From positions 7,874,001 through 7,938,000 of the forward strand of contig NW_024704749.1 of assembly GCF_018977255.1 (NCBI RefSeq): DNA of 64,000 nucleotides, written 5' to 3'. Shown here piece after piece: positions 1-36,000 of this stretch; the first letter of the stretch is position 1; the number at the start of each line of letters is the position of its first letter. The notes beneath the pieces were generated by a model. That model had not been told where the DNA came from. It did no database searches and saw only the letters and a list, made by a program, of their open reading frames with translations. This stretch comes from Callorhinchus milii (taxonomy: Eukaryota). Made by a program: the position numbers and the translations under genes.

Positions 1-431
1 AGTGCTACAGCACAGATTTTGTTTATATATATTCAATCGAACAGTGATATTTTTCTCCATTTGAGCTACCTGGCTTAATACCACTGCTGCTCGCTCCCCC
101 TCTTTAGCATCTTTCAAGAATTTATCCAATCTCCTTTAAAAATAATTCACAGACTCTCCGTCAACAACACTCTGTGAACACTTTCCTTCATCACTATGAG
201 CGCCAGATGCTTCCCCATCCCCACCCCATACTCACGTTATTTAAAGAACTTTCTTTCAATAACATTATGTCCAATCTGTTAGTTCCAATATGAATTTATG
301 CTACATTTCTCAATCATGGATACCATTAATCATTAATACCATCAAATACAGACACAGTCTCTCCATGTCTAAACACGGTGCAAGTGTCTCATCCTAAAAT
401 AACATTGAATTAATGCAACAACAAAATTTAC

Positions 432-12725: not shown

Positions 12726-14689
12726 TTGATAGAAATAGATCTTCTCAGCCATTGAACCAAATATCAAAGGTATTGAAATCTTGCTTAGAAATAATAGGAA
12801 CATCTGTTTTGCCAATCTCCATGTAAAAGCTGGCTAACACACACACACTTTCCCCCTTCACAAATCAAAGTATATGTTTTACGTTAGCAATTAGAATTAA
12901 CCTAAGCAGCAATCTTTCATCATTGGAAGGAAGATATTTTACCTTTAATTAATGAAAGGTCAGCTCCAGCTTTAGAAATGGTCAATTGTGAAAATGTAAT
13001 TGTCAGATCTCCATGGGGAGGTTCAATATAATTGTTCAAAAGTAGTAACACTGGTTGGATTATTATTATTATAAGACTAACCTCAATACTCAATCCAAAT
13101 TAACTGATTAATATTAGTTGTCAAATCAAAATATTTAGTTCCTCCTATTTTGAGACCCAACTTAAACATAGGACTTTGTTTAATTCAATGCAAATATCAA
13201 ACCACAACAACTTATCCCCCCATAATTCCCTCATCTAAAACTACATTGTTGCAAAAGAATGAGATAACCTACCCTCAGTATTCGATCATTCCTAGTAGAC
13301 TGAGGAGCTATTCATTGACCCCCTCTGTGTCTTTTTACAGTTTTGCTGAAATACACACTTTAACATTCACAGAATTTTGATTTGGAAATCTCAATGAACA
13401 AATGGTCTGATAATGTGCAAGATGCAGGTTTGAGGGAAAGCAAACCGATCGCAAATCCACCTCCACATTATATCTGTACTACATATGGTATCCAAAACTG
13501 GATCATCAAATTTGTTTTGTACTTACACCAACACCGAATGCATCTGCAGATAACGAGGAGATTCATAAAATCATAGTATTACAGCTCAGAATCAGGCTCA
13601 GCAAGTCTGTGCTGTTCTCCACACAAGCCTCCTAATTTAGCCCCACTCTCCCACTCACTCTACATACAGTTCCACTTAACATTGCTCCCGTCTCACATCA
13701 CATGATTGTGTCCAGAACTCTTCCTCCCACTCCCTGTGGGCATTTTAAAAAGTTCTAACAAGTTGACCAACAACAAATACCCAGTACGTCTAGTACGACT
13801 AAGAACAAATATTGCCATACTTAAAAAGCTGCAGTACGACCAAAATAAACACTAGAATAATAAAAAAAAATTGTCATAAAGCTGGTAAACAAGAATTTTA
13901 AGGAGATTAAAAAAAACGAGGTTCCGGAGTAGCTTCTGGTGAACGGCAAACCCAAACCACTGTCAATCTCTGAAAGGAAGCTCTAACCAGTCAGACTTAC
14001 AGGTAAACTAAGAAAGAAGCCTGGAGATAGCTGCAAATCATCTGGTGGTTGGGTTTGGGACACAAGTCACTTACAGGAAATAGTTAGTACGATTAGTAAA
14101 ACTCAATGAGCCAAGGCAGCACAGTGCCAGTTTAAAAATGTACAGCTTGATCAGTCAAGTTCAAGTTGATTGATTACAGTTGGGTTTAATACTTAATACT
14201 TAAACCAACACAGAATGCATCAGCAGATAACTAGCAGACTCATAAAATCCTAAGTGGTACTGCTCAGAATCGGGCTGTGGAATCGTGAGGTTTATCCCCC
14301 AAAACCTCGCCATTCACACTCTTCCAAAAACAATAACGCTTAATAAAAAGAGAGAGACAGAACAGACAGACAGACAACGCGGGGTGGGGGGGGGGGGGAG
14401 GACGGTCCTCTCGGCTTTTAAACGAGCATTTTGAAGTTCACTTTCTCCGCAAAGTNNNNNNNNNNNNNNNNNNNNNNNNNNNNNNNNNNNNNNNNNNNNN
14501 NNNNNNNNNNNNNNNNNNNNNNNNNNNNNNNNNNNNNNNNNNNNNNNNNNNNNNNNNNNNNNNNNNNNNNNNNNNNNNNNNNNNNNNNNNNNNNNNNNNN
14601 NNNNNNNNNNNNNNNNNNNNNNNNNNNNNNNNNNNNNNNNNNNNNNNNNNNNNNNNNNNNNNNNNNNNNNNNNNNNNNNNNNNNGACAG

Positions 14690-18763: not shown

Positions 18764-21700
18764 TCATTTCTTCTTCATTTGGTTTCTCGGGGAGTTCTTC
18801 AGCAGGCTCCTCAGTTTGAGGTACGTCCCCGTCGACTCGGAGAGATTGTCGTATTCAAACGGCGTGATTCCTGTGGCGAACTTGCCGATGTCGGGGACGG
18901 AGGAGACCCGGTGCTCGGCTTGTGCTTTGGAAACGGCAGAACCTGGGACCCCATCGTCGGTGGCTTCCTCCAAACATACCTGGTTTCCTCCATTCGTGGT
19001 TCCAGTGGCCGGCTTCAGTGCGGGCTCCTCTTCAGTGCCACTGTTGCAGTGCATTTCTGCCTCCACAGTCTCCGGTTTTTGACTCTCCTCCTGTTGAGGG
19101 TGGTACTTTCCATTACACTGACTGGTTCATCCCTAGAGTCCACCAAAGATGCTTCTGCACTGGGGCTCTTCGTTTTATTTCCAATGATTCCCGTTTTTCC
19201 ACCGGATTCCTCAAACTCCATGGGAATGTCGGGAGGATTCAGTGCCAGGGAGGAGCCTGCAGAGTTCCGGGTGAGAGGGGAATCGGAAGGAGCCTCCACC
19301 TCACTGTTGATGCTCTCAGCCTGCTCCAGCTCAGCCCAGATCAACCTCTGTTGTTCTTCCAGCTCTTCCAGCGATAAGCCGTCTTCATTCAAAGCTTCGT
19401 CCACAATCCGAGGAATGCTGCTGAAGTGACCTTTTCCTTGTGAACACCCTGCTGGAGAGTAGTTAGGGGTCGATGGCGGGGTGTCTTTGGGGAGTGGAGG
19501 AGGGGTTGGGGTGAGGGGTGGAGGTGGGATGAAGGAGGGCGGTGTTGCAGGGGGCGTTCCTTTGGGTAAAGGAGGCGGGGTTGAACGCAGCTGGTGATTG
19601 GGAGGCAGGGAAGGAACATGGTTTCTAGGCCTTGGAGTATCTGAACCTGTGAAAGTAATAAACAAGAAAATTACACACAAAGCTTCCATTGCACAACTCG
19701 GATTGATCCATAAATTCTACAAGTGACTCATTCTCAGTTTGTACTGAAACTTAGCTTATCTGGAACCTCAGTAAGTCCTGAACAAATCTGGCGGACATTC
19801 CACATGCTGTTTGATTTCAGCAAATGTGGAGACCGAACACCTAAAAACTCAGTGTGTAATGAATACAAGTCTCCAATTATTATTTAAAAGCAGTTTTGCA
19901 TCTAGGTCTCCCTAGGATCCGAGACTTTAAACAAAACTATGTTCTCTTAAAATGGATCTGCCATTTCCACAAGTCTTAAATTGAGTCTTGAAGCAACACC
20001 GAAGTCTTCGATGAGGAACAGCGACTAGTTGTACACTAACGCACTTAAATTCTATACCTGAATCAATGTCCATGTCAAATGTGGATGCGTTTGAGACGAG
20101 TTCATTAGATTTGCGCTTCTTTACATGCTGAGGGCTTCTGTCACAATCCGAACCCCTCTTGTTAGAAATGAGTACAGTCTGGGGAGAAATTACCGTTAGT
20201 CACACAGCAACAGGACAGTCATCAAAACACTTCCATTAAGAGGCCAGGCATTATTTTACGGCTTGGCCTTGATGGGAGGAATCACCAACTACAGCTTTGG
20301 TGGAGAAGCAGATGTCGTTGTGGATCTTGCACATATTCCATATACCTTTCAGAGGGAGTTGTCAGAGAGGCTTTAACAAGCCTTGGTTGAGTTCCGTGAC
20401 TACATTTCAAACAATGCCTGCTTATGACAAAGTCTTGTCTACCGAAGAATGACACACCGCTCAGCAGTGCAAATAAAACACAAGAGTCTCAGATTCTACT
20501 TAACGCAAAAAGCAAAGCAACAGATCTCTACCTAATGGATGGGCTGAAAGGTAAAATGTGTTGGGACTTGCCTTGGGAAAACATGCAGCCAGATGACTTG
20601 CAAATTGCTCCTTCAAGTGATGTGACTGTATTGGAATCGAACCATAGAGCCTCCACTCCTGGGGAGACACACAATAACAGGAGATAAATCGTACACGTCA
20701 AGCTAAAGAGGTATTGTGAGACATATTCTCTCCTGTAATGTACACTTCTTTTCTGGTTGGTTTGAGGCAATTGCTTTGAACCGAAAGTAATAACAGTCCT
20801 TGCATTTGAGATAGTGCCTTATCACGTCTTCGAGACATCTCAAAGCGCTTCACAAAATTTACTGTAAAGTGAATTGACTGTGTATATTTTGTAGGCGAAA
20901 CACGGCAACCAATTATGCACAGCAGTGTCCGACAAACACTCGTGCATTGAGTGAACAAATTATTATTATTTCTTAGATTTTTTTTGAAGGGATTATTACC
21001 CCTGAAAAAGTAATCCGCAAATTGACTAACGAGATTCCTACTTACTGCCTAATGTTTTATCCTGCCCAAGAATCAAACCCGGATCCGAGGCCAGTGCACT
21101 AATGAATACACAAATCAGCCAAGTACCCCACTAGATTTTCTTTACCCAACAAGAGGTTTGAGAAATATCAAGTACAAAGCTTACATCTTGTATTCCCTTC
21201 GGGAGAATGACGTTGAACCCTATGTAATCTATTAGCTTGCTTGTATCATACGCTGGTTGATGAGTTTTGGGATGTTGCTCGTTGTCCTGTACTTCACCAT
21301 CACTGGAGTCTGCACAAAACAAACATGGACTGTTAAAGGGATGTTGATTCTTCCCAAAAGCTAAAAAGTCCATCTTCACAGCAACTTACAACCGCCCATT
21401 TATTGGGCACTTGTTTTCTTTTTTTTAAAAAAACTTTTAACATTTAAATGAATTTACAGAGGCCAATATTCAAGCATCTATAGTCATGTTTTGATGGGTT
21501 TGTTCAACACTCTTCAGAATCAAAGATATAAAGGGGGAAGCAAGCAAGTTGGTTTAAAGTTGATGTTATCAATGAGGAGCAAGCATAGCACAGGTACAAG
21601 CAGCTGAACAGCTGCCTTCTGTGCTGATGATTTTACGCTTTACCTTTTCCATCGTATAAAGCAAGCCCTGAAGTCTCCAGCTCAGCCTCCTCCAGCCACC

Positions 21701-24700
21701 CAGGTGGGTAACCCAATTGGCGCATTCGATATATAAACGGGGGGAGATTTTCATCAGTCATGCCTAGAGCGTCTTTAAGTTCGTCGCTGCATAACAGAAC
21801 AAGCAAAACAAAGGAGCAAATCAGTGAAAGAGCGCACCATTCCCACTGAACATTAGGGGTCCCATTCCCAGGGCTAGACACGTCAGGTACTGCTGAAACT
21901 CCAAGGGTGGTTGGCTGTGGTTAGTAAGCTTGCTCCAGCTTCTTGTCTGGTCTCATTAAAGTGAAAGGAGTCACTGCCAGCGAGTCAAGACTGATTACAT
22001 TTACCCTTTATGCCCAGAAATTTTCCTTTGGCAAACCAAAGCTATTTTTTATGCAGAACAAATTAATAATAATAATCCTTGCATTTGATATAGCGCTTTT
22101 CATGTCTGAGACGTCTCAAAGCTCTTCACAGAATATGCTGTAAAGTGAATTGACTGTATATTTATAGGCGAAACGCGGCAGCCAATTGCGCACAGCAGCG
22201 TCCCACAAACGTGGACTGAAAATGACCAATTTATTATTGTTTTTTTTTGGAGGGATTATTTTATTAGGCGTGTGGAGTAAGGAACCTTCCTCAACGTTTC
22301 GCCTGCCTGGAATTGAACCCAGGTGTCTTGCTTACAAGGCGAGTGCTCCAACCAGAGCTACAGGACTCCAAATAATGGCAAATACAGGGTATAGATAGGA
22401 GGACAAAGGAGAGGGGAACCAGATGACGTGCTCTTCCTCAGTCATCAAAGATGTCTTTACCTGATTACACCTGGCTTGAACTTGTCAAACTTCTCTTCGT
22501 GGTACCGGTGCTGAGAGTTTGGATGTGGTGAATCACTAACCATGGTCATGAATTCCTTCCGCTTTTCACTAATGCGAGCCAGGTCACGAGGCTATTGTAA
22601 AACATACCAAACTCAAAAGGCTGAAGGTGTTTGGATGACTTTCGCTTATTTTACACAGTGAATAAAATACAAAAACCTTAGGTGACTGAATGTGCAGATA
22701 AGCTAGAAAAAACATGGATGCAAAATATTAGTAGGTTCATCATCCCAAACTCTGCGTAGGGCTAGAACATAATCCGGGGTAAAGCACTCTCTCCCCTTCT
22801 CTTTTGAAGGTGCCGACTCTCAATGGGGCAGAACTCCACATGCACTAACTGCAGCCTTCTGGCACCTCCCAGTGGCCAATCCTCATGGGTGAGCCTCGTC
22901 AATGAGTCTACAAGATACTTAACTCCATCTTTGCCCACTGAAACTGGTGGTTAGTATATTATAATAATCCTTGCATTTGATATAGCGCTTTATCACGTTG
23001 TTGAGATGTCTCAAAGCACTTTATACTGTAAACTGAATTGACTGTATATCTTGTTGGCGAAACTATAAACCATGTCAAATCTTTGAATTCCATTTTGCTG
23101 CCTTTCCTTCTTAAACCTTACTTCTCAAGTTTCCACCTATCTTCTCTCTAACATCCCAATCAATTCAGCGCCTGCTGGCTTCTGGAAGAGTGCACCCCAT
23201 ATTCTCCTGCCATTTTATGTGAAAAACATAGGTTAAAAAAAATCACAGTGCAAATTCATGGCCATCTTACCTTCGGACAATCTTTCAGCTGATGTTCTGT
23301 TGAACCACAGTTGAAACAACACGCCTTCGGTCTGTTTGATACAAAACGTTTTTTTCCCACATGTCAACAACACATTCCCCTCTCTCAGAAATCTCACAAG
23401 CACATACTTTGATAGATTCTCCAGTAAGACAATTGAAGGCATTATACGTACCTCTTCGCTTTCAATCCCACTTCTTGTCCATCTAAGGACACGGCCTGGG
23501 CAAAGATTTGTTCGTATCTTTACAGGACATTCAGGAATTACGCAACAAGATCTTTGGACACACATCACACCAGTTTACGTGCCTTAATAAACGTGCAGCA
23601 TTAAATCACGTGAGCCTTCTCATAGTCAACAAACAATTGTTTTGGACACAAAGGATATTGTACTAAGAGAGAAAGAGGCTACAACAGAACCCCATTAATC
23701 TGGTTCTTTTATCTCCATCAAAAATCTCTCTGGTCATTTGTATCAAACCACTCCAGAGATATATTAATAATTGCCACAATTATAATAAGGAAATCAAATA
23801 CATTTTGCATTGTACTATGACGATTCCCAAATTAAATTTTAGTGCTCCAATTCTTTTCCAATTTTCTCTGCTTTTCTCCTTGCATTTGATATAGCACCTT
23901 ATCATGTCTTCGAGACATCTCAAAGCGCTTCACAAAATATACTGTGAAGTGAATTGACTGTATATTTTGTGGGTGAAACGTGGTAGCCGATTGTGCCTGG
24001 CAGTATCCCACGAATAGTCATAGATTCAATGACCACATTTGTTTTAAAAAATGGCTTATTACCTCTAGAAAAGCGATCCGCCAACAGACTAACAACCGGG
24101 TTCCTACTGACTGCTAGATAAACAGAGGCTTGTAGAGTAAGGAAACTTGCCCAACGTTTCACCCTGCCCGGGAATCTAACCCAGGTCCTCTCGCTTGCAA
24201 GGCAAGTGCTCTAACCACTACACCACAGGACTCCACATTTTCCTTTAATTGTGCAGGATACTTTGGTATTTCCCATCCATCAGTCAGCTGTGGATTCTCG
24301 TTAAGCAGTGGTTGTCCAAGTTTGTCAAGGCAGAAATTGGTGAAGTACTGAACGCTTCCCACAACCTGTGTGAAAACAATGTACAAAGCTTTCCTGATAT
24401 TCATTGGATCAGTTGACAACGACCACAGATGTCGTTTGCTGCTGTTACTTGCATAATTGCAAATTCTGCACAACCTTTCCTTAGACCATTCGCAGATGGT
24501 ATGTACAAGAAACAGACTACAAGAACAACTGAATAATTGAAGTTGAGGTACAGATCAGTCATGATCTAATAGAATGGCAGAACAGGCTCGATGGGCTGAA
24601 TAGCCTCATTCTGTTCCTATGACCAAAGGGCCTTTTTCTTTCCATGACGTTAATATTTTGAGCAATCATTAAATGTTCAGAATTTTCCCCAACTCTCATC

Positions 24701-27571
24701 AGTCACATAATGACGCATAGGAGGAGGAAGTCACTCAGTCCACTCTGCATTTTATTAGATCCCGACAGATCTTTTAATCCCATTTTCTCCACATCATCTA
24801 ACATTTTTACTTCCCAAGTATGGATCTACCCATTATACTCACTATCTAAAACTCCTCAATCAGATCACCCTTTAACCTCCTCAGCCATAATAATAGTAAT
24901 CCTTGCATTTTATATCGCATCTCATCACATCGTTGAGACTTCTCAAAATGCTTCACAGAATATATTGTAAAGTGGAGTGACAGTGTATTTTGTGGGTGAA
25001 ATACAACATAACCCACATGCACCCAGGCTTTCATCATACATAGGCCCCTCACCCAAAGGTCTGAAAATACTGCTACGAAACACAAACCATGTTGACTTAC
25101 GTAAAATACATCTTTTGTTTTCTTTATTGTATTCAGAGTGTCCGCCTTCCGCTGCTCTGTCAGCACTACACTTGATGGCTGTGAAGAGAATATTTTTATA
25201 TATATATATAAAGAAAAATTCTGATCAGAAATAACAATCTTCCAACCCCTGATGTGCAATACCTTCACTTACCTGCGGTTTCACGTTAAATGATGATTTT
25301 TCAAGATCACTCTGGTTTTCCTTTTCATATTTTTCTCTCAGCCCTGTGATGAAATCTTCAATTTCCTGATGATACCGTCTGAATTATAAAAAAATGATGG
25401 TGTGTCTTTTAAATTGAAGACTCTAAAGCTAATATTAAAGTGAGAATCTTGCGACAAATGAGCAAGCAAAGCTAAGTAACCTGTTTTGCCCATAAAATAC
25501 ACAGTCCACTTTATGGTATATCCTGTGAAGCGCTTTGAGATGTCTCAACGATGTGATAAGGTGCTATATCAAATGCAAGGATTATTTCATTAATGGTTCA
25601 ACATAAACTTACTTGGAAATGTTGTTGTTCATAAACAAGACCTGAACTAGGGGACCATCCAACTTGGAATCGCTCACCACAATTCTAAGGACCAAAAAGA
25701 TAAACAGAAAAGTTGACAGGTTTAAATAAAAAATCTTCCAAATTTCAGACTCCAATCAAGTTGCATTTTTCACTAAAAAACCCTAAATCTTAACTTTCAT
25801 GCGTTACTCCTTAATTATCTTGAACTATATACCTGAATGGTATCTCTTACCTCTAAGCCCTCAATAGAACACTGCACTGTAGAATATAGAAAATACTTTT
25901 TTTCTAAAACTCAAATGAAGGCAGTTGTCCTACTTCAACCCACCAAATTCTAACCTGTTCGAGTTTTATAAATCAGATAAGGAAGTAGACAATTATTCCC
26001 ATTTGAACTACCTTCAAAAGTAGGTAGGAATAATAAAACACACACAACTTGCTAAGAAGTTCTATCTGACACAATGATACAAACACACATGGTACTGTAT
26101 GAAATAAAATATATCCATAGCTGGAGGACAAGAGTGTACTATAAAAGTTAGTTAAGACAATACTAGATACCATAATTCAGAATTAAATGCCTTGTACTTC
26201 CTTAATGTCCAACTCACCTTGGCTGAGTCAATAAGTTTAGCTTCCGTCTGAGTTCCTGATGTAAGCTGACTGTCAAGGAAATCTTTAAGATTGGCAGTAA
26301 GTACATTCCAAACAACTCTAATAAGTCAGTCTCTTAGTGTATTATGGACTGGATATTACAGATGTTGAAATAATTTTTTAGATATTTTTAAATGTATCCT
26401 TCACACATACTATAGAGCAAATAGCTGTGAAGATCCAATGAAAAGCATGGCACAGAGAGGGGATAGGGATGTGCTGAGGAATTGAAAGTGAAACCAAACA
26501 AGTATTCATCATCAATCTGATAAAACCACGATATTGGGAATCTGATGCATCTGCCGTCGTTTTAAACTAAAACAAAATCACACAGCAAATTCCCCAAGGA
26601 AAGCGAAGCTCCCCGGGTGATAGAAGAGGCAGCTGCAGATAGAAACTTAACAGGGAATGTGAAAGTAAAGCACGACTGTTTGTGCGACACTGCTGCGCGC
26701 AACTGTCTGCAACTATCTGCCGGCAGCACAGCCCGTTTCAGGGTCCGTCCGTCGGTTTTGTGGCTCAAGTGCGGTCAAGCGGAGGGCGTGCGTCTGGAGG
26801 TCGCGGGCTGTTCCCGGAGAAGGAAGCGCCGCTGAGATGGCGGCGTTACCCTCCGCGCCGTCCCGTCACCGGCTCCCGCCGGTTGCCTCTGGCGCGGGAC
26901 TCCAAACAAACCAGTGGGGGCGGCATCTTAAAATCAGCGCTGGGCCGTTCAGGAGTGGGACCAAGAAGCGGTTTTTCCATGTAGGTGAAAAGGGAAAGGG
27001 GGGGTGGGGGGGGGGAGAAGGGGGGTAGTGGACACCTGGAACTCCGTCCCTCCCCGGAACGGCGGCGGATGCTGGACCGGTTCAAATTTTCCAAGGCGGT
27101 CAGATATCTGTTAGGTCGGGGGGGGGGGGGGGGAGGAGGTGGTCAAGGGATGTGGGGCAAAGGCGGGTATATTAAGTGGCGTTGGGGGGGGTACAGATCC
27201 GCCATGATCTAACTGAACGGCGGAACGGGCTCACGGGGGCTGAATGGCCTCCTCCGGTTCCTATCGTCTTCCCGCCGAGAGCTCCCGTACAGGCGCCGCC
27301 GTTTGATTCCCTCCTCCCTCCCTCCCGCCCGCCCGCCCTCCCGGCGCCGCTGCTGACACAGGATATTCTCGGCCTGCAGCGCCCCCGCCCGCTCCTCGCA
27401 CTCCTCCAGCCGCCTCCTCAGCGACTCGGCGGCCGCCTCGCCCCCCTCGCCGCCGCCGTCGTCGTCCTCCTCGTCGCGGAAACGGATGTGAGACGGCCCC
27501 GGGGACTCCCCGTCGTCGTTAAACTCCTGGAAGAGCTCCCGGTCACCGAAACCCACCGACGCCGCCGCCAT
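18764..27571 (-). CDS. ZCCHC8: Zinc finger CCHC domain-containing protein 8 (NEXT complex scaffold), 14 coding exons
   Basis: Exons: 27571-27367, 26260-26218, 25684-25613, 25378-25273, 25178-25101, 24365-24262, 23517-23452, 23331-23271 (zinc knuckle [14 protein letters not shown]), 22591-22461, 21786-21644 (PSP domain [18 protein letters not shown]), 21309-21185, 20658-20572, 20178-20058, 19646-18764 (Pro-rich, then C-terminus [34 protein letters not shown]). All junction phases are consistent; one frameshift lies inside the last exon. Confidence 0.96.
20790..21100 (-). mobile_element. SINE copy (tRNA-derived family with L2-type tail)
   Basis: Reverse complement of the family tail GTGAAGCGCTTTGAGA..GTGATAAGGC.CTAT.TCAAATGCAAGG, plus a degenerate B-box. 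Confidence 0.7.
22065..22350 (-). mobile_element. Near full-length tRNA-derived SINE
   Basis: Minus-strand head GGAGTCCTGTAGCTCTGGTTGGAGCACTCGCCTTGTAAGC..GGTTCAATTCC and an (ATT)n tail. Confidence 0.8.
23518..24261 (-). other. ZCCHC8: U12-type GT-AG intron (ZCCHC8 intron 6)
   Basis: Donor GTATCCTGC; branch-like TTCCTGAAT (23537-23529) close to the AG; no polypyrimidine tract. Confidence 0.8.
23876..24235 (-). mobile_element. Near full-length tRNA-derived SINE inside the U12 intron 6 of ZCCHC8
   Basis: Minus-strand head GTGGAGTCCTGTGGTGTAGTGGTTAGAGCACTTGCCTTGCAAGCGAGAGGACCTGGGTTAGATTCCC and the family tail. Confidence 0.8.
24535..24620 (+). mobile_element. CR1 LINE 3' terminus
   Basis: GATCAGTCATGATCTAATAGAATGGCAGAACAGGCTCGATGGGCTGAATAGCCT..TCTGTTCCTAT, a typical CR1 3' end. 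Confidence 0.7.
26261..27366 (-). other. ZCCHC8: U12-type AT-AC intron (ZCCHC8 intron 1)
   Basis: Donor ATATCCTGT, branch site TTCCTTGAC (26280-26272), acceptor AC. The join gives ...[18 protein letters not shown]. Confidence 0.92.
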
Positions 27572-27692
27572 CTTGTGACTGACCTCCCGCTTCCCTCCCT
27601 CCCTCCCTCCCCCCCCCCCACCGGAGTCGTGTCAAAGGTCAGGGGTCGCGCGCACGTACGCAACAGAGGTCTTCCCCATAGCAACACCTCCA
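27572..27692. promoter_or_regulatory. ZCCHC8 / unknown-gene divergent CpG promoter with DR1 and RFX-like motifs
   Basis: DR1 GTGTCA-A-AGGTCA (27629-27641), X-box-like TTCCCCATAGCAAC (27672-27685), and a YY1-type AAGATGGCGGC overlapping the ZCCHC8 ATG. CpG island spans ~26680-27690. Confidence 0.55.
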
Positions 27693-27853
27693 NNNNNNNN
27701 NNNNNNNNNNNNNNNNNNNNNNNNNNNNNNNNNNNNNNNNNNNNNNNNNNNNNNNNNNNNNNNNNNNNNNNNNNNNNNNNNNNNNNNNNNNNNNNNNNNN
27801 NNNNNNNNNNNNNNNNNNNNNNNNNNNNNNNNNNNNNNNNNNNNNNNNNNNNN

Positions 27854-28335
27854 GAAGAAAGGAGAGGGAGAGAGGAAGGGAGGGAGAGGGGGAGAGGAGA
27901 NNNNNNNNNNNNNNNNNNNNNNNNNNNNNNNNNNNNNNNNNNNNNNNNNNNNNNNNNNNNNNNNNNNNNNNNNNNNNNNNNNNNNNNNNNNNNNNNNNNN
28001 NNNNNNNNNNNNNNNNNNNNNNNNNNNNNNNNNNNNNNNNNNNNNNNNNNNNNNNNNNNNNNNNNNNNNNNNNNNNNNNNNNNNNNNNNNNNGGAGGGAG
28101 AGGGGGGAGAGGAGAAGGGGGAGGAGGAGAGGGAAGAAAGGAGAGGGAGAGAGGAAGGGAGGGAGAGAGGGGGAGAGGAGAGGAAGGGAGGGAGAGAGGG
28201 GGAGGGAGAGAGAGGGAGGGAGAGGAAGGGAGGGAGAGAGGGGGAGGGAGAGGAGAGGGGAAGAGAGGAGAGGGAAGAAAGGAGAGGGGGAGGAAGAAAG
28301 ATAAAGAGAGAGAGAGAGAGGAAGAGGAAAGAGAA
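27854..28335. repeat. Polypurine (GA-rich) low-complexity repeat broken by N gaps
   Basis: Almost purely G/A units such as GGAGAGGGAGAGAGGAAGGGA. Confidence 0.9.
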
Positions 28336-28893
28336 CTTAAGGAGGGTCTCTGAATGGTGGGAAAGGAAAAAGGAGATCACCAGAGGTTCACGCGAAGAGG
28401 TGTCTTTCGGCCCCATTTGATCTCATCGCTTCCAAAGTGATCGCCATCTCAGCGACTCGCTACTTCTTACTTGAGAAGAGGGCTATTTCTCCTCAGTCAA
28501 TCTCTCCGATTTGATTACCAGCCCTCCACCATCTCTCCAATAGCGGGCACCGTTTCTCAACCAGTTGGTTAAATGAATCCAGGGTCCCGCCCTTGACCAC
28601 CCTTCCTGGGAACCCGTTCCAGCTATTGATTACTGTTCCGTGTAAGGAAATGCTGCCTGGTGTATGTTCTGGAATTTAAGACCTTTTCACGAGTAAAAAA
28701 CGGCATGAAGCATTGGATCAAACTATAAGGAGGAGGGAAACTGGCTCCTGGTGCAACGTGGCAACAACATCAACAAAATTGCATTTGTATGGCGCCTTTC
28801 ACGTCGGAAAAACGTCCCAAGTTATAAGAAAGTCCCAAGGCACCCGAGCAGTTCTGCAGCTTCAGGGGATGTGGATGCACCGTCAAAGTAATC

Positions 28894-31637
28894 ATGGAAT
28901 CTGCTGAAGGAGTTCCAGTGTGTTTACCTGAGTGGAGCGTTGGGCACCGCAAATTCAGATATCTGTTCCTGAGGTCGCCCGAATCGATTAAAGTGTGCAA
29001 GGAGATTCAAACGGAGGTTCGTGTAACTTCACATCTCTTGACAATGGATCTGCAGCTTGCATTATCCTGCCAGTAGGAAAATGCAACAATATTTAATAGA
29101 AGTAAAATCTTTCTCTTGGACTGTACCTTCAGTCATCCTCCTACCCTCTCCCTTCCTGCCCTCAACCCCTCCTGATCCCTAACCCCCCCCCCCCCCAACA
29201 TGAAAGAAGCTTTACAGATGTAATTTCTTGTTGTTTATTTCTTCCCTGTAGGTAATATTGCCTAACATCTTGCGTTTGGTTTCCCTCTCCGTTCTCTTTT
29301 AGGAGAATCTGCCTCCCCTTTTCCTGGGGGCTGACATTGTTGCTAAAACCGGTATTCGGGTTGAAAATCATCCAAGAATTCACGCAAAGTTTGCAAAGAA
29401 AGGACTGGCAACCAAATTGAGCTTCACTTCAGGTACGATAGTGCTCCGAGATTTGACCTCTACTCTTTGCCTTTCTCGTTTCGCTCTGCAAGCATTGTTA
29501 GCTGTAAAAATTACTCGGGGCAAATTGTAAGACAGAGAAGGCAAACCCTTTTGATTTTAAAATTGGATTAATTAATTATCCTTACATTTGATATAGCACC
29601 TTATCACGCCGTTACGATGTCTCAAAGGGCTTCACAGAATCTACTGTAAAATGCAGTGACTGTATTTTGTGGGCGAATTCATCTATATGCTGTATTGTAT
29701 ACAAACCATTTGACTTCTTTGCAGTTACATCATTCAGTTCTTCAAACTCAAATTCTTTCTTTCCAACTGAAATGGTAGCAAGACCCTGTGTTTATCCTGA
29801 ACCTGCCCTTCACACCCCCAAATCTATGCCCCCTTTACCTAATGCCTTGAAGTATCTAAAAGTAACGGTACTTACAGTAACTCAATTAGCACCTTATATG
29901 TCTATAAGGCCTGCTCCGAGATTCTGAGCGCTCCAGATTATTTAGGTGTTTTTCATAGGTCATCCTGTAGCTCGTGGAGTCCTGTAGCTCAGTGATTAGA
30001 GCACTCGCTTTGCAAGCGAGAGATCTGAGTTCAATTCCAGGCAGAGGGCGAAACCTTGGGCAAGTTTCCTTACTCCACACAGAGCCTAATAATAATCCCT
30101 CCAAAACCAAAAACAATAATAAATTGGTCATTTTCAATCTACGACTGTTTGTGGGACATTGCTCTGCGCAATTGGCTGCCGCGTTCGCCCACAAATGTAG
30201 TCAATTCACTTTACAGTGTGTTCTGTGAAACGCTTTGGGACGTCCTCCCGACGTGAAAAGCGCTATATCAAATGCGAGGATTATTATTATTATTATCTTT
30301 CTTAATACAAGCTGGATTGACATTGCAAATAGCCAGATGTGCAAAGAAATCCTAAATTCTCTAAACATAGTCTCTCTGCAGTGGCTGTTGTCGTCCAGGA
30401 CTAATCGGTTGGCCCGTGCAGTTTTTCTACTGAGAAAGAAAATGTGAATTGCTCCACTTCTCGTGTTTCTCAGGACTGTCACGTTTTATGTTGAATCCTG
30501 TCTATCCTGTAACCATTTACTTTCAGCTATACGATTTGAAGGACTGAAGGTGCCAAGTGTGGTGAACAGTTTGTGGTTTTACAGCATTCAGGGACTGTTT
30601 CGAGTGGCTTTCGAAATGTACAGTAAAGAGCAACAGTTAGAAGTCCTCGACATTCTTAAGGTACTACAAGTACACAATAGATTAGTCGTTTTCATATTTA
30701 ACAATTTTACTGATGGTAAATCTAATCAAGTATTTGTCATCAATTACCTTTCCCTCTGTGGTAGGATTTGTGGAAAGGCAGGATAAATGATCCTCTTCTA
30801 AACCAGACCTACAACATTAAGTTCCTGCAAAACATCTCCGAACAGTCCGAAAATTGCCTTATGGAAACAGGAAGCCACCAAGATTTTGCATCGCCTTCGG
30901 AGTTTCAAGCCACTTATTCAGAGTGTGAATTGCATTCCATTAACAGAAATAGGACAACTGCGTCATCTTTGGACTGTGGTATCAGTACCAGAGTTGTGTG
31001 TGAAGGTGACCACAGCTACTGTGTACAAGAGAGTGAACCCTGTCCAAATAACTCAGCACGTTTGGAGGCCACAGGTTATGATTCTCTATCTGCAAGGCTC
31101 CAATTAGCTTCTCAAGCAATCAGAAATTTACCTGCACAAATTCAAGAGCAAGGGAAAGCTATTGCACTGTTGACTGATTTTTTAGAACTCTTGTTAAGTG
31201 AAACTGTATCTGTGCAGAGGTTGGTTGACACAGTGCAGGAATTTCTGTCCCAAGTTCAAGACTTAGTTGTCAAAACGGAAATTATTGAACTGGGAGCAGA
31301 TTCTATTTATGGCAGCCACATGCTTTATGCGGTCAGCAATTGGTTGGGGCATCAGTTTTATGCTGCCAATGCCTCAATCAGCAGTCAAGTGGAAGATTTC
31401 AAAACAACACATATCAGCAGGATCACAGACTTACCACCTGCAGAGGAGTTGGTGGATCAATTGTTTCCTGAAGCTATGAAGGTTTTGCTATTAAACTGGA
31501 TGGGGCTTGATGATAATTCTGCCATGTGGAAACGGCAAAGCGAGTATCCCATACTGCTTCTTATTCTAGAGTTTGCTAATCATAATCTGATCACTGGCGT
31601 AGCTCACGTTTTATATTCAAGCTTAATATGCAAGTAA
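28894..31637 (+). CDS. Uncharacterised protein, 4 coding exons, about 419 aa
   Basis: Exons: 28894-29016 (MESAEGVPVCLPEWSVGHRKFRYLFL...), 29303-29432 (ENLPPLFLGADIVAKTGIRVENHPRIHAKFAKKGLATKLSFTS), 30527-30660 (AIRFEGLKVPSVVNSLWFYSIQGLFRVAFEMYSKEQQLEVLDILK), 30765-31637 (DLWKGRINDPLL...EYPILLLILEFANHNLITGVAHVLYSSLICK*). All introns are GT-AG with polypyrimidine tracts; phases 0/1/0 join into one open frame. Confidence 0.88.
29974..30296 (+). mobile_element. Full-length tRNA(Ala-like)-derived SINE in intron 2 of the unknown gene
   Basis: A-box TAGCTCAGTGA, anticodon-like TTGCAA, B-box GAGTTCAATTCC, body, L2-like tail ending in (ATT)n. Confidence 0.85.
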
Positions 31638-33034
31638 GTATTTTATTCAGTATGTTCTGTGAAGCGCTTTGAGATGGCTCGAAGACGTGATAAGGACTAT
31701 ATCAAAAGCAAGGATTATTATTATTAAAATGCCCGCTCCAATTTCATTTAGACCGCAGATTAAGAGGATAATTGGTTTATTATTGGAGGGAAAGCTATAC
31801 ACAATACTCAGCTACACGAGAATGATTTTCACCAGAAGTCTACTTAAAGCTTAATTTGCATTAAACAAATTTATTCTCTGCAACATTTCAAAGGTGTACG
31901 AATTATTTAGGAAGCAATTCTTTGTATATTTGTATTCCATTATTGTTCATAGTGGAACATCTAACAATGATCAAGGTTTGGTTATAGCAGATAATGGCAG
32001 GAAAATAGTGCACAACAATAAGAAGGATTTTGTGCTACATTGATGTAATCAGTTATTACTGGTGCACATTAACAAGCTACATGTCTGACAACACTGAAAC
32101 ATACTTGTATGTAGCCTTTCGTTATGCATCAACATGATAAAATATTATCAACACAAGTATATTTCTTATGATTCAAAGCTCCCAAGTTCTAAAGGGGCCA
32201 CCACTGCATGCTTTTAGGTGCTCTGTGGACTTTCACTAAACTAATATTTTCACCACTTGGGAACTTACAGCAATGTCGTGACAAACAGTGAGTGAAATTT
32301 GTCAGCCTTCATGTTATTACTCTTCACTTCAAAGCAGCCTTGACATCTTAAAATATCCACCATTATCTTTGATGGACAGACTTTAAGGTTCAAATAATAT
32401 GAGAATTATCGCTTTGTGACACAATGAACCATGCTCAGAGCATTCTAGAACACATTTTGTAATAGTTATACTGAAAATCATCCATTTATTGTCCAGAAAG
32501 CTTTGCAATGAACAGTGCACTATAACGCACCTTTCAGCACTGCAATAGGTACTTACAAACAAACTATGTCCTAATTTACAACTACACAATCATTTGCCTT
32601 TCGAAAGATGAAAATAACTGTACAAGTTTTAGTACAAAAGCAATCACATAATACAGCAACATGAAGTATTACAACAAAATGTGAGATTGGGTGGTTTGAA
32701 ACCAGTCTGCAGACATCACTTCAAATACATTAAAAAAGTGATAGAATCTCCTTTCCTTGCTGCAAATAACACCACCAAATAAGTGTTCCTTCAAAGTTTC
32801 GGTTTTAAGGAAGAGTAACTATCACAATGCGATTGCCTGATACACTGTTATCTTTACAATCAAAACCTTTTTAATAATAAATTATTTTTGCATTGCAACA
32901 ACCATGCAAGCTAGACAGCTAGCTTTTTTTTCCGGTAAACAGGAAGGTGAAAAGATGAAGCTTGAAGTCTCCCAACATGGATGAAGACAATATAAAAATG
33001 TGCTGTACTTCAGCACAAGTTCAACATCTTATTC

Positions 33035-36000
33035 TTAAATCGTGTCCATTCCTCTCATGGAAGAGGAGAAACCCAGTCCCATGCCTCGCTGGGTGTGTGT
33101 TTGTGATCGTGCCATCTCATACTGAGCATCCAGGTTCCTGAACATCTCCTCTTGTTGCTTCAAAGTTTTGAAACTTTCTTCAGTCGCCGCCGTAGGTGTT
33201 CTCACCTCCTCCTCATCCTTCAACACAGAATTACAATAAAGATAAGAATTACTCTCCCGTTTCGCTCACAAAATACACAGTCACTACATTTTACAGTCTA
33301 TCCAGTGAAGGGCTTTGAGATGTCTCAAAGACGTGATGAGGCGCTATATCAAATGCAAGGATTATTATAACTAAAACATTCACATTTCAGCAAATTGAGG
33401 TCTTTATTAAAACTTAAAGCTTTCAATGATCGCTTATAATTCTCTTATCTCTGCAATCAACATTTTTAACACAAGATACAGTAAATTATGTGAAGAGTAT
33501 GGAAGTGAATTTAACGATTCTTAATATGCCTCACCTTGATGCCCATTAATTTTCGGAATTTTACATTTTGGTCCTTGTTACCAAAATTCAGCCTTTCCCA
33601 CAATTCTGCAGTCTGTGACTTATCCTGGAACATGATCAAAAAAAATTGTGAAAAATAAGCCACCATCAGCCAACCCTGTGCTTATTTCACCCACAGATAC
33701 ACACAATAGATCCCAGTATTCCTGCCAAGCAGTGATAGAGTCCCATACTGAACTAACACAGTGCCACTTGTTACCAAATTTGTTGGAACTATTTACTATG
33801 GATTCAACAAAAGAAACGTTAAACCTGGAATAATTGCTGGAGTTATTTCCCCATCCACACAACAAATCTGAACCTATTTATATTAGTGCACACAGCAAGT
33901 ACTGTCTGCAAATTCCCACGAAAAGATTCACATGAACTCCCAAATCAATCATCCAGTTATAAAGCTACACTTGGAAATAGGTACTTTACTCGCTCTGTCA
34001 CATTACATGGTGTAATTGGGTGGAGAAAAAAAAATTGTGGGACTCTGCTGTGCGCAATTGGCTGCCATATTTTGTCCACAAAATAGTCTATTCACTTTAC
34101 AGTATATCCTGTGAAGCGCTTTGAGATGTCTCAATAAGGCGCTATATTAAATGCAAGAAGTATTATTCAAATGCATCTAAAAACGTAAACTTTTCTACCC
34201 AAAGCTAGTGCAAAACCATTAAAAGTAGAGGGTATGAAGGCATTACTAATCAAACCAACTTTAAACATTCAAACTCACCCCCTCTTTCTTATTCTGCCAG
34301 AGCAGTTTCCGTTTCTTTTCTTGCTCTGCAAACTTCATTGGGTTCACAGCTGTTGGGTTGTAGTAACTGGGCACTGCTATGCCAGTTTCAGCCAATGCCT
34401 TGGCTTGTAGTGCTGCCATCTGAGCAGCCATTGCAATCTGAGGTGTGACTTGAGTACCAGATGCCAGGAGGGCAGCAACATTGAGGACTGATCCACCACT
34501 TGCCACAGCTGAAAGACACCAAACATCAGTCACTCACTACACTTGCCTCCTCTGGTCAATCTTCAGCAGTTCTGAACATTTAGGCAATTCAAACATTCAC
34601 CCACATTAGTGCATATTCAGTTTCACAGAATGAGCGCTTTTTATTTTACATCAACACTTCTGATACTGTGTTCAATCTGCAGTAGAGTCTAAAATGCACA
34701 CCAGTTGGGTCAAGCCCCATTGTTCTGAGTTCAGATATCAAATCAGTCTCCAAAATATAATGTAATGACCCAACTGCAGATGTTACACTGTTATTTAGTA
34801 CTACACAGTGTCAGCCATTCTCTCTCCCCAATATGCAGTGTTAATGTCTCTGCACCAAATCCCTGAACAAATTCAATAAATCATTGCCATTAATACTCAA
34901 GGTCAAATTTTGACCAGTGGTCAAAGTGCCCACACTCAATGAAACACTGCAAAATCCCAGCACCCAATTTTTATAATATTGTTTCAGCTGAACAACTTCC
35001 ATGAGATGCACAATCACAATTGATTGTGGCTGGAGGTTGTGCAATCCTCCAAGTGCACTCTTCTCAAACAAAACACCAAACAATCTTTTCTATATAATCT
35101 GTTTCATGTCACCAGCAACACATTTGACACAAGAATGTATGCACCTCCCAGCCTTGCAGTCATATAATAACATTCAACGTGTCGCAATAACATTTGCTGA
35201 TAGGTAGACATTAAGCTTTCCTACCTGTTGGGTTCATACTTCCAAGTGATTCGCTAGCTGGATCTATTGAAAGTAGAAAACACTTACTTTTCCAAAAAAA
35301 CATTGTCCACTAGATTTTTAAAAAATCCTAATTTTGCACTAAAGTATCACTCTTGCGTTTGTACATATAGTCTGGATCCTGATGAACCATGCACATACGA
35401 GAATCGGACATTCAGAATGCTTGCCTCGCAAGCAAGAGGACCTGAGTTTGATTCCCGGGCGGTCAAATCAGGGGGAAACCTTAGGCAAGTTTCCTTATTC
35501 ACATAAATGCCTCTCTCTGGTTACCTAGCAGTAAATGGAGTTTATTGTTAGTCAACTGGTTGTTAGTCAATTGGCAGATCGCTTCTGGGGGTAATAATTC
35601 CTTCAAAATAATAATCATGGGGTCATTCAACCCATGACTGTTTGTGGGACACTGCTGTGCGCAATTGGCTGCTGCTTTTCTCCCACAAAATACAGTCAAT
35701 TCGCTTTATAGTGTGTCCCGTGAAGTGCTTTGAGATGTCTCAAAAGACGTGATAAGGCACGGTGTCAAATGCAAAGATTACTATTATAAAATCTCCCCTC
35801 TACAACCTGCTCCCATTTCCTAACAGGAATTCTGAAGGTCTTTAAATTAGTAATACTCACAATTAAACACTGGTACAACACAATCAGACACACAGAGCTT
35901 TTAACTTGGTGCTTCGCTTACTACAGTCAGACAAGAGTCCTCTTTCCTCAGATTGTTTTTTTACAAACTGCCTTAGAAGCCAAAATAGGAACTGCAGTAA

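What the first reader, a model, noticed from the sequence alone, without database searches (positions are those of the whole stretch)
28894..31637. Unrecognised, intact 4-exon protein-coding gene wedged between ZCCHC8 and RSRC2
Seen: three short exons and an 873-nt terminal exon splice through canonical GT-AG sites into one frame of about 419 aa. The ORF track shows only disconnected pieces and misses exon 2. The protein appears bipartite: an N-terminal ~150-aa region rich in aromatic and basic residues (HPRIHAKFAKKGLATKLSF, NSLWFYSIQGLFRVAFEMY, DLWKGRINDP), a Ser/Cys/Glu-rich linker, and a helical C-terminal region (LYAVSNWLGHQF, DLPPAEELVDQLFPEAMKVLLLNWMG, YPILLLILEFANHNLITGVAHVLYS). I cannot assign it to a domain family. 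Known: as I recall, human ZCCHC8 and RSRC2 are direct neighbours. Inference: an old vertebrate gene kept in this lineage and lost on the way to mammals, sharing a bidirectional promoter with the NEXT scaffold.
Basis: partly seen in the sequence, partly recalled or inferred. Interest (0 to 1): 0.85.

Follow-up and report, generated by a model that had tools for sequence, protein, structure and literature searches.

The report
Conserved uncharacterised gene beside ZCCHC8
This is a real, expressed, four-exon elephant-shark gene, already predicted in public databases but never studied, that belongs to an old animal gene family missing from reptiles, birds and mammals and whose front half looks like a viral-type DNA-binding domain.

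Summary
Four exons (28894-29016, 29303-29432, 30527-30660, 30765-31637, + strand) give a 419-codon frame. RNA-type contigs from two studies carry the predicted GT..AG junctions.

The gene is not unrecognised. It is RefSeq XP_007900404.1, "uncharacterized protein LOC103184291" of Callorhinchus milii, orthologue of zebrafish si:ch211-110p13.9.

The family is single-copy and vertically inherited. It occurs in cartilaginous and bony fishes, coelacanth, lungfish and amphibians, and also in amphioxus, hemichordates, echinoderms, molluscs, a centipede and jellyfish. No amniote appeared in two protein searches.

It has no Pfam domain and no paper. It lies head-to-head with ZCCHC8 and tail-to-tail with RSRC2.

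A confident model of residues 1-160 (pLDDT 88.9) matches only Bro-N / KilA-N / APSES / Dachshund-type DNA-binding folds. Scores are modest and there is no sequence-level support.

Best reading: a soluble two-domain factor with a basic Bro-N-like DNA- or chromatin-binding head, a disordered linker and an acidic helical tail domain with a near-invariant C-terminus. The gene is certain; the mechanism is inferred.

The parts
27212..27631 (-). Neighbour: first coding exon of ZCCHC8 (start codon at about 27571), head-to-head with the gene
   Evidence: The translation matches residues 3-72 of human ZCCHC8 chains 7z52_A and 7s7b_B, E 1.3e-09 and 1.8e-08. A further exon at 21636-21920 (-) carries the PSP domain and matches ZCCHC8 residues 293-343, E 5e-23.
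27632..28336 (.). Intergenic stretch between the two divergent genes; candidate shared promoter (inferred). It holds two N runs, 27693-27853 and 27901-28092, which were left unfilled.
   Evidence: N runs listed. GC 0.56-0.70 and CpG observed/expected 0.64-1.24 over 26600-27799. There are no data on transcript starts.
28337..28893 (+). 5' leader as far as the RNA contigs reach (at least 557 nt, unspliced, 8 upstream ATGs). The true start is unknown.
   Evidence: Contigs of X3 and X4 begin at 28337, where the tool notes that reads seem cut at a repeat. Contigs of X5 and X8 begin at 28561 and 28585. Upstream ATGs counted.
28894..29016 (+). Exon 1, coding part (residues 1-41)
29017..29302 (+). Intron 1 (286 nt, GT..AG)
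   Evidence: Joint 29014>29301 'skips 286, GT..AG (cut +2)' in X3 and X4
29303..29432 (+). Exon 2 (residues 42-84 and the first base of codon 85)
29433..30526 (+). Intron 2 (1094 nt, GT..AG). It holds a tRNA-derived repeat (tRNA-like part at 29982-30044).
   Evidence: Joint 29427>30522 'skips 1094, GT..AG (cut +5)' in X3, X4 and X8, and in X5 with 30 letters on one side. Rfam tRNA 40.4 bits. ARAGORN finds no tRNA.
30527..30660 (+). Exon 3 (rest of codon 85 to residue 129)
30661..30764 (+). Intron 3 (104 nt, GT..AG)
   Evidence: Joint 30658>30763 'skips 104, GT..AG (cut +2)' in all four runs laid
30765..31637 (+). Exon 4, coding part (residues 130-419 and stop TAA at 31635-31637). It encodes the end of the N-terminal domain (to about 30842), the disordered linker (residues 156-234, 30843-31079) and the helical C-terminal domain (residues 235-419, 31080-31634).
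   Evidence: 100% identity to P0001 residues 130-419. Domain limits taken from the model's confidence profile.
31638..31684 (+). Start of the 3' untranslated region. The contigs break inside a repeat copy, so the 3' end is not resolved.
   Evidence: Contigs end at 31677 (X3) and 31684 (X4). The repeat core lies at 31658-31676.
33038..33265 (-). Neighbour: last coding exon of RSRC2, tail-to-tail with the gene
   Evidence: Pfam SMAP domain, E 3.1e-09. An arginine/serine-rich exon lies at 37555-38118 (-). The name RSRC2 rests on this domain, the RS-rich exon and the gene order; that RSRC2 carries a SMAP domain is recalled.

Best explanation
Shown:
- Window positions 28894-31637 (+) hold the Callorhinchus milii gene LOC103184291. 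It has four coding exons, is transcribed and spliced as predicted, and encodes a 419-aa protein.
- The protein is the orthologue of zebrafish si:ch211-110p13.9.
- The family is single-copy and vertically inherited across cnidarians and bilaterians. It was not found in amniotes.
- The gene sits head-to-head with ZCCHC8 and tail-to-tail with RSRC2.

Inferred:
- The protein is soluble and has two domains.
- Residues 1-155 form a compact, net-basic alpha/beta domain. Its predicted fold resembles the Bro-N / KilA-N / APSES / Dachshund-homology class of DNA-binding domains. I propose that it contacts DNA or a chromatin protein.
- Residues 156-234 are a fast-evolving, disordered acidic linker. Its one conserved motif is D/E-H-x-Y-C at residues 211-215.
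- Residues 235-419 form an acidic helical domain. Its last 31 residues are 97.8% identical on average across jawed vertebrates. I propose that they dock a conserved partner.
- The most likely role is therefore a nuclear transcription or chromatin factor that links a DNA-bound head to a partner-binding tail.

My odds: the gene is real and under constraint, 0.97. The N-terminal fold belongs to the Bro-N/KilA-N-like class, about 0.65. It acts by binding DNA or chromatin, about 0.4.
For: Gene and transcript:
- The exon map is identical to the public protein.
- All three junctions are seen in contigs of two runs of one study. Junctions 2 and 3 are also seen in two runs of a second study.

Constraint:
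- There were 368 and 393 homologues at E<=0.001 in the two word-indexed searches.
- The exhaustive search gave 194 cluster representatives at E<=0.001.
- Conservation is mosaic: 68%, 16% and 76.5% for the head, linker and tail domain, and 97.8% for the last 31 residues.
- 77 columns are invariant in 39 jawed-vertebrate sequences.
- In a tree of 36 rows picked from the proteins in hand, the gene tree follows the species tree. Holocephalan is sister to elasmobranchs, and the sarcopterygian and actinopterygian clades are recovered.

Fold of the head:
- The model of residues 1-160 has pLDDT 88.9 and pTM 0.85.
- Only 36 of 48,161 solved chains reach Z>=2. The best eight entries are one structural class: granulovirus Orf22 N-domain 4ye7 (Z 6.0, 99 aligned), Mbp1 DNA-binding domain 1bm8/1mb1 (5.5/5.3), Dachshund 1l8r (5.1), SKI-like 3eq5 (4.7), Swi6 N-domain 2xfv (4.4) and Bqt4 5yc2/6a6w (4.3/4.2). 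DdrC follows at 3.8.
- The second look adds the PCG2-DNA complex 4ux5 at Z 5.5.
- Against predicted viral structures, 2 matches have E<=0.001 and the best 50 have E 4e-4 to 2.3e-2 with probability 0.75-1.00. Of the 35 named rows, 24 are BRO/Bro-N proteins, 6 are 'repressor domain protein', 2 are antirepressors and 3 are other; 15 rows are unnamed.
- Independently, the language-model search on the whole protein gave Bro-N and P22_AR_N clusters as its named leads, all under 0.9.

Context for DNA binding:
- Head net charge is +1 to +8 (median +4) over 39 orthologues. Residues 60-82 are net +5. The tail domain is -11 to -2 (median -7).
- One homologue, crinoid P0146, carries a THAP DNA-binding zinc finger (E 1.2e-12) in front of the family domains.
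- Bro-N and KilA-N are described as DNA-binding domains in passages read from PMC8096241 and PMC4862756.
Against: There is no sequence-level link to any DNA-binding family:
- 0 of 60 family members match Bro-N, KilA-N, P22_AR_N or Ski_Sno among the 25 Pfam families shown out of 32 at E<=0.1.
- No annotated PHROG family recurs.
- hhalign of the family profile against P22 Ant alone gives probability 0.34%, and against a profile of 11 Ant relatives 0.45%.

The structural scores are modest:
- Foldseek against solved structures gives no match at E<=0.001.
- All Z scores are under 8, a range the tool itself calls common for unrelated arrangements.
- Query-normalised TM scores are 0.31-0.44.

Other points against:
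- Some members of this fold class bind peptides rather than DNA. This is recalled for Bqt4, whose listed entries are complexes with Rap1 and Sad1.
- The THAP fusion is 1 of 60 and could be a merged gene model.
- No nuclear localisation signal was looked for, and no expression site is known because run identities are coded.
- The C-terminal domain matched nothing beyond a generic helical hairpin at residues 252-308, Z<=7.5.
Confidence: 0.5

Rival explanations
1. The head has the same fold but is a protein- or peptide-binding hub, as in fission-yeast Bqt4 or the Swi6 N-domain. The protein is then a scaffold that does not touch DNA itself.
For: Bqt4 (5yc2, 6a6w; Z 4.3 and 4.2) and the Swi6 N-domain (2xfv; Z 4.4) are among the nine best structural matches. 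The Bqt4 entries are complexes with Rap1 and Sad1. The near-invariant tail also points to protein partners.
Against: The closest matches are DNA-binding members: Mbp1, the PCG2-DNA complex and Dachshund. The head is net basic in all 39 orthologues examined. One homologue carries a THAP fusion.
Confidence: 0.22
2. The fold resemblance is a chance arrangement. The family is a new fold class with a role unrelated to nucleic acids, for example a cytoplasmic adaptor.
For: All Z scores are under 8, there is no Foldseek match to solved structures at E<=0.001, TM scores are under 0.5 on the query, and there is no profile-level similarity. All language-model hits are under 0.9, a range that a third of shuffled proteins reach at 0.8.
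Against: Three differently built searches agree on one class: the structure aligner on solved chains, Foldseek on viral models, and language-model features. For this model only 36 of 48,161 chains reach Z 2, so the background is low.
Confidence: 0.22
3. A tail-anchored membrane protein, like Bqt4 at the inner nuclear membrane. The hydrophobic, invariant C-terminus would be the anchor.
For: The last 31 residues are hydrophobic and end three residues before the stop. The model has low confidence there, under 50 for residues 399-419. Bqt4 shares the head fold class.
Against: The best 19-residue Kyte-Doolittle mean in the tail is 1.41, and the protein's maximum is 1.51 at residue 261. The usual cut-off is about 1.6 (value recalled). 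E398, N401, H402 and N403 sit in the middle of the stretch and are invariant or nearly so.
Confidence: 0.04
4. Not a functional host gene: a mis-annotation, a pseudogene, or a transposon or virus gene.
For: The fold class is typical of DNA viruses and mobile elements. One homologue is fused to THAP, a domain related to P-element transposase (relation recalled).
Against: The frame is intact and spliced. There is one copy in the window. The gene tree follows the species tree. The last 31 residues are 97.8% identical across jawed vertebrates. No transposase or viral Pfam family is found.
Confidence: 0.02

Closest known systems
Bro-N domain proteins (baculovirus, ascovirus and entomopoxvirus BRO proteins; phage BRO and antirepressor proteins; Pfam PF02498 and the related P22_AR_N, PF10547)
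   Same: The predicted fold of residues 1-160 matches them best among viral models. 24 of the 35 named rows in the best 50 are BRO/Bro-N, with probability 0.75-1.00. They are also the language-model leads. The domain sits at the N-terminus and is followed by an unrelated C-terminal part.
   Different: There is no sequence or profile similarity. This is a single-copy cellular gene of animals with introns, not a viral multigene family. The C-terminal domain is unrelated to anything found.
Fungal KilA-N/APSES DNA-binding domains (Mbp1 1bm8/1mb1, PCG2 4ux5)
   Same: Structural alignment at Z 5.3-5.5 over 88-97 residues. They are a cellular use of a fold otherwise typical of DNA viruses.
   Different: No match to the Pfam KilA-N model. 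There are no ankyrin repeats and no other APSES/SBF architecture. According to passages read in PMC4862756, known eukaryotic KilA-N domains lie in fungi, with three exceptions, none of them a conserved animal family.
Dachshund-homology domain of SKI, SKIL and DACH (1l8r, 3eq5, 1sbx)
   Same: It is an animal nuclear-protein domain with a similar alpha/beta arrangement, Z 4.5-5.3 over 89-93 residues.
   Different: No Ski_Sno Pfam match. The alignment stops at about residue 118, so it lacks the last helix and hairpin. The rest of the architecture differs.
Fission-yeast Bqt4 (5yc2, 6a6w)
   Same: The overall layout is the same: an N-terminal APSES-like domain, a long disordered middle and a hydrophobic C-terminus (layout of Bqt4 recalled). 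Z 4.2-4.3.
   Different: The C-terminus here does not score as a membrane helix. There is no sequence similarity. Bqt4 is fungal.

Membership tests
LOC103184291 / si:ch211-110p13.9 orthologue family (uncharacterised, no Pfam model) | Collinear similarity over both conserved domains to the annotated members | tested here: met
   Exon 4 alone matches P0001 at 100% identity and sharks at 57-63%. The four exons map onto P0001 residues 1-419. In the 39-sequence alignment 77 columns are invariant.
LOC103184291 / si:ch211-110p13.9 orthologue family (uncharacterised, no Pfam model) | Orthology: one copy per genome and a gene tree that follows the species tree | tested here: met
   There is one locus in the window. 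In the tree of 36 chosen rows Callorhinchus is sister to 7 elasmobranchs (SH-aLRT 95) and the main vertebrate clades are recovered. Copy number elsewhere in this genome was not tested.
LOC103184291 / si:ch211-110p13.9 orthologue family (uncharacterised, no Pfam model) | Conserved position between ZCCHC8 and RSRC2 in other species | not testable with these tools
Only the position in this window is known.
Bro-N / KilA-N / P22_AR_N DNA-binding domain superfamily | Match to a Pfam model of the superfamily at or near its threshold | tested here: not met
   No family for exons 1-3 at E<=1, and only Nup54 at E 0.11 for exon 4. Among the 25 families shown of 32 at E<=0.1, none of these is matched by any of 60 members.
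Bro-N / KilA-N / P22_AR_N DNA-binding domain superfamily | Profile-profile similarity to a member family | tested here: not met
   hhalign of A2 against P22 Ant gives probability 0.34%. Against the 11-sequence Ant profile A3 it gives 0.45%. A3 has low diversity (template Neff 2.6), and no Bro-N proper profile could be built, so the test is weak.
Bro-N / KilA-N / P22_AR_N DNA-binding domain superfamily | Shared three-dimensional fold | tested here: inconclusive
   The best matches are consistent: Z 6.0-4.2 to 4ye7, Mbp1, PCG2, Dachshund, SKIL, Swi6 and Bqt4, and Bro-N proteins at probability 0.75-1.00 and E from 4e-4. But Z is under 8, query TM is under 0.5, and the query is a predicted model.
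Bro-N / KilA-N / P22_AR_N DNA-binding domain superfamily | Binds DNA | not testable with these tools
   Only indirect hints: a net-basic head and one THAP fusion.
SKI/SNO/DAC family (Dachshund-homology domain) | Match to the Ski_Sno Pfam model, plus the family's further conserved domains | tested here: not met
   There is no such Pfam match. There is only a fold resemblance at Z 4.5-5.3.
Tail-anchored membrane proteins | A C-terminal hydrophobic helix long enough to span a membrane | tested here: not met
   The best 19-residue hydropathy mean in the tail is 1.41, with invariant E, N, H and N inside it. No dedicated predictor was available.
Transposable element or integrated virus gene | Repeated copies, transposase or viral hallmark genes nearby, and patchy phylogeny | tested here: not met
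   There is a single locus with host introns, no such Pfam match, and a tree congruent with the species tree.

The most novel reading that the evidence does not exclude
Before cnidarians and bilaterians split, an animal ancestor captured a Bro-N/KilA-N-type DNA-binding domain of viral origin and fixed it as a single-copy regulator. This would be the animal counterpart of the fungal SBF/APSES acquisition. The gene has since been kept under strong constraint in animals from jellyfish to amphibians and was lost in the amniote stem. Because it is absent from human and mouse, and was not seen here in fly or nematode, it has escaped study.
Probability: 0.22. Interest if true: 0.7.

Novelty: new variant of a known kind. 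Interest (0 to 1): 0.45.

Why it matters
The gene model itself is not new; it is in RefSeq. Three things appear to be new.
- The family reaches back to the cnidarian-bilaterian ancestor.
- It is missing from amniotes.
- Its most conserved N-terminal domain has a predicted fold otherwise typical of DNA-virus and phage regulators and of fungal APSES factors.

Passages read in PMC4862756 state that known eukaryotic KilA-N domains are fungal, apart from three sporadic cases. A conserved animal family of this fold class would widen that picture.

The family also has genetically tractable members in zebrafish and Xenopus. The function of a deeply conserved, amniote-lost gene could therefore be tested directly.

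If the fold link fails, this remains one of many conserved uncharacterised genes.

Tried and rejected
Searches that led nowhere:
- Pfam on each exon gave nothing usable.
- A family profile against all Protein Data Bank sequences gave only a designed helical protein at E 0.53.
- PHROGs on 60 members gave no annotated family that recurs.
- The language-model search on residues 235-419 gave no usable hit.
- Fold searches with the whole model were filled by a generic helical hairpin at residues 252-308, Z<=7.5. I therefore make no claim about the fold of the C-terminal domain.
- hhalign against P22 antirepressor was not significant. Both runs aligned the same short stretch, family residues about 101-138 to Ant 88-126, which I take as a hint only.
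- Paper searches found 0 papers for the zebrafish clone name and 0 for six locus names of orthologues. Expression tables that list si:ch211-110p13.9 may exist there and could bear on tissue and function.

Ideas considered and rejected:
- Tail-anchored membrane protein, rejected on hydropathy and invariant polar residues.
- Zinc finger in the linker. Only H212, Y214 and C215 are conserved, which is too few ligands.
- Transposon or virus gene.
- A functional tRNA gene in intron 2. Rfam gives a partial match, ARAGORN gives none, and the piece is part of a repeat.

Steps that could not be done:
- Transcript start, transcript end, strand and tissue. All runs laid were contigs with coded identities.
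- A direct look for remnants in amniote genomes, because no such collection was at hand.
- Constraint is therefore argued from protein conservation only. The six coding differences among runs are too few to use: 2 synonymous, plus E5G, V7L, S157P and L316I.

The exons were searched apart (exon 4 alone).
Full report
WHAT IS THERE. The stretch 28894-31637 on the + strand holds four coding exons: 28894-29016, 29303-29432, 30527-30660 and 30765-31637. They add up to 1260 nt, which is 419 codons and a TAA stop. Each intron begins with GT and ends with AG behind a pyrimidine tract. The start codon has A at -3 and G at +4, and an in-frame stop lies upstream at 28825. Searching the translation of exon 4 alone returned, as best hit at 100% identity, a 419-aa public protein. 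It is XP_007900404.1, 'uncharacterized protein LOC103184291' of Callorhinchus milii. The window is therefore elephant-shark DNA, and the gene is already predicted. The one difference is E30 in the window against D30 in the record. The exons were searched apart, and full-length work used the public record by its id.

IS IT EXPRESSED AND SPLICED. Fourteen runs hold exon 4. None is on record as RNA, and ten are guessed to be RNA. I laid four of these, two from each of two studies, on 28300-32800. Two runs of study P1 each have one contig, of 1869 and 1875 nt, that covers 28337-29014, 29301-29427, 30522-30658 and 30763-31677/31684. With the tool's cut offsets, the three GT..AG joints are 29016/29303, 29432/30527 and 30660/30765. 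In study P2, run X8 has joints 2 and 3. Run X5 has joint 3, plus joint 2 with only 30 letters on one side. DNA assemblies would not skip introns, so these are transcripts. A processed DNA copy is not formally excluded, because the tool did not report the joined form in DNA runs. Contigs cannot show starts, ends, strand or level. The leader reaches at least 28337 and holds 8 upstream ATGs. The contigs break 40-47 nt after the stop, inside a repeat.

SURROUNDINGS. From left to right the window holds five genes:
- the CAP-Gly exon of a CLIP1-like gene (372-1034, minus strand);
- ZCCHC8 on the minus strand, with its PSP-domain exon at 21636-21920 and its first coding exon at 27212-27631. The latter matches human ZCCHC8 residues 3-72, with the start codon at about 27571;
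- the gene in question on the plus strand;
- RSRC2 on the minus strand, with its SMAP-domain last exon at 33038-33265 and an RS-rich exon at 37555-38118;
- KNTC1 on the plus strand, with an N-terminal domain exon at 49815-50135.

The gene is thus head-to-head with ZCCHC8. It is 766 nt from the ZCCHC8 start codon to the first base seen in RNA contigs, and 353 of those bases are written N. It is tail-to-tail with RSRC2. A CpG-rich stretch covers 26600-27800. A shared promoter is plausible but not shown.

THE FAMILY.
- Exon 4 finds 368 proteins at E<=0.001. The best 120 include 101 named rows, all from cartilaginous fishes, ray-finned fishes, coelacanth, lungfish and amphibians.
- A caecilian orthologue, the closest available relative of amniotes, finds 393. 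The best 120 include 117 named rows, of which 28 are amphibian and none is amniote.
- An exhaustive HMMER search with a 39-sequence profile finds 194 cluster representatives at E<=0.001, of which 150 are listed.
- I looked up 30 of them; 10 gave an organism. These are Branchiostoma, Ptychodera, Amphiura, Anneissia, Argopecten, Littorina, Pomacea, Strigamia, Sanderia and Rhopilema.
- I compared 146 stored representatives (ids P0121-P0266) with the named vertebrate proteins. Full-length ones fall either at 59% identity or more to a fish or frog, or at 36% or less. Two fragments lie at 50% (P0134, P0162), and their best hits are teleosts.
- No amniote orthologue is therefore visible. A very divergent or unannotated one cannot be excluded, because 44 weak hits were not listed and no amniote genome could be searched.
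- A tree of 36 chosen rows follows the species tree (quick search, LG+G4; the invertebrate branches are long and their order is unsure).

CONSTRAINT. Over 38 jawed-vertebrate orthologues, mean identity to the Callorhinchus protein is 37% for residues 1-41, 68% for 42-145, 16% for 146-234, 23% for 235-310, 76.5% for 311-419 and 97.8% for 389-419. In total 77 columns are invariant. The tail motif persists in amphioxus, hemichordate and echinoderms, and in weaker form in jellyfish. Such a mosaic across lineages that have long been separate shows purifying selection on two domains joined by a free linker.

WHAT THE PROTEIN LOOKS LIKE. The whole-protein model (mean pLDDT 67) is confident for residues 1-155, below 50 for 156-234 and 399-419, and in between, 53-82 by blocks of ten, for the helical part 235-398. 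A model of residues 1-160, built with 59 homologues, has pLDDT 88.9 and pTM 0.85. It consists of a three-stranded meander, further strands, and three main helices at 61-73, 105-115 and 118-134.
- Foldseek against solved structures gives nothing at E<=0.001.
- The Foldseek-independent aligner finds only 36 of 48,161 chains at Z>=2, and the top of the list is one structural class:
  - granulovirus Orf22 N-domain (Z 6.0);
  - Mbp1 DNA-binding domain (5.5 and 5.3);
  - Dachshund (5.1);
  - SKI-like (4.7);
  - Swi6 N-domain (4.4);
  - Bqt4 (4.3 and 4.2);
  - DdrC (3.8).
- The second look adds the PCG2-DNA complex at Z 5.5.
- Against predicted viral structures the best 50 rows have E 4e-4 to 2.3e-2. 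Of the 35 named rows, 24 are BRO/Bro-N proteins and 8 are repressor-domain or antirepressor proteins.
- The language-model search had already given Bro-N and P22_AR_N clusters as its named leads, all below 0.9.

These three lines agree. Each is weak on its own: Z is under 8, query TM is under 0.5, and the query is a model. At the level of sequence nothing supports membership. No Pfam or PHROG match appears in 60 members, and hhalign against P22 antirepressor gives a probability under 1%. I therefore say that the head is Bro-N/KilA-N-like in fold (about 0.65). I do not file the family as a member.

HOW IT MOST LIKELY WORKS. Passages I read describe Bro-N and KilA-N as DNA-binding domains (PMC8096241; PMC4862756). 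The latter cites Iyer et al. 2002, which I did not read. The head is net basic in all 39 orthologues (median +4), and its helix region 60-82 is net +5. The tail domain is acidic (median -7). One crinoid homologue has a THAP zinc finger in front, 1 of 60 members, and this is possibly a merged gene model. No membrane helix is indicated. My best reading is a soluble nuclear factor. Its head binds DNA or a chromatin protein, and its invariant C-terminus holds a conserved partner (about 0.4). The rivals are a peptide-binding scaffold with the same fold, a chance fold resemblance with an unrelated role, a tail-anchored protein, and a non-functional or mobile gene.

NOVELTY AND VERDICT. Still, no paper mentions the family under the names I searched (supplements closed) and it has no Pfam model. 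According to passages read in PMC4862756, known eukaryotic KilA-N domains are fungal, with three sporadic exceptions. A conserved, amniote-lost animal family with this fold class would therefore be a modest but real addition, and it is testable in zebrafish and Xenopus. Interest 0.45.

Noticed in passing
window 29982-30044 (+), inside intron 2; wider repeat about 29960-30290: A tRNA-like segment (Rfam tRNA, 40.4 bits, model positions 5-66) that ARAGORN does not call. It is the head of a tRNA-derived short interspersed repeat. In the RNA-type contigs its word depth is about 7e5, against about 35 for the gene's exons.
   Followed up: partly
window 31658-31676 and 18 other places: A 19-base repeat core occurs 19 times in the window at up to 3 mismatches (0 expected by chance). 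One copy lies 21 nt after the gene's stop codon. It breaks the RNA contigs there, so the 3' end of the transcript stays unresolved. A separate contig covers 31698-32800 and beyond, and could belong to this gene or to the RSRC2 3' untranslated region.
   Followed up: partly
window 31634-31639: The last codon and the stop are overlapped by GTAAGT, a consensus-like 5' splice site. In the alignment one salmonid isoform (P0042) leaves the family's C-terminus just before 'ICK' and continues with other sequence, so an alternative end may exist in some species. No joint from this place is among the 15 joints listed for the four runs; 80 more were not shown.
   Followed up: no
window 28337-28893: The leader seen in RNA contigs is at least 557 nt long and holds 8 upstream ATGs. 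That is unusual for an efficiently translated message. Either the true start lies closer to the coding start, or translation is regulated.
   Followed up: no
window 28907, 28912, 28962, 30846, 31205, 31323; codon 30 at 28981-28983: Six coding differences occur among the four runs. Two are synonymous. E5G, V7L and S157P lie in variable parts. L316I lies at a nearly invariant place where one ray also has I. The public protein has D30 where the window and all covering contigs have E30.
   Followed up: partly
window 27693-27853, 27901-28092, 47161-47763, 47768-47907, 14456-14684: The N runs lie at or near the two divergent promoter regions (ZCCHC8 with this gene, and RSRC2 with KNTC1) and in a GC-rich stretch near 14.5 kb. 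They hide the very bases needed to judge the shared promoter.
   Followed up: no
window 44001-46600 (-): A 2-kb block with GC 0.61 holds long open frames of acidic E/G-rich repeats (for example 45382-46191, minus strand), upstream of the RS-rich RSRC2 exons. It is probably low-complexity repeat DNA near the RSRC2/KNTC1 promoter rather than coding sequence.
   Followed up: no
protein P0146 (Anneissia japonica, XP_033113538.1), residues 5-78: This crinoid homologue carries an N-terminal THAP zinc finger (E 1.2e-12) ahead of the family's two domains. It is the only one of 60 members scanned with a known added domain. It may be a true fusion or a merged gene model.
   Followed up: partly
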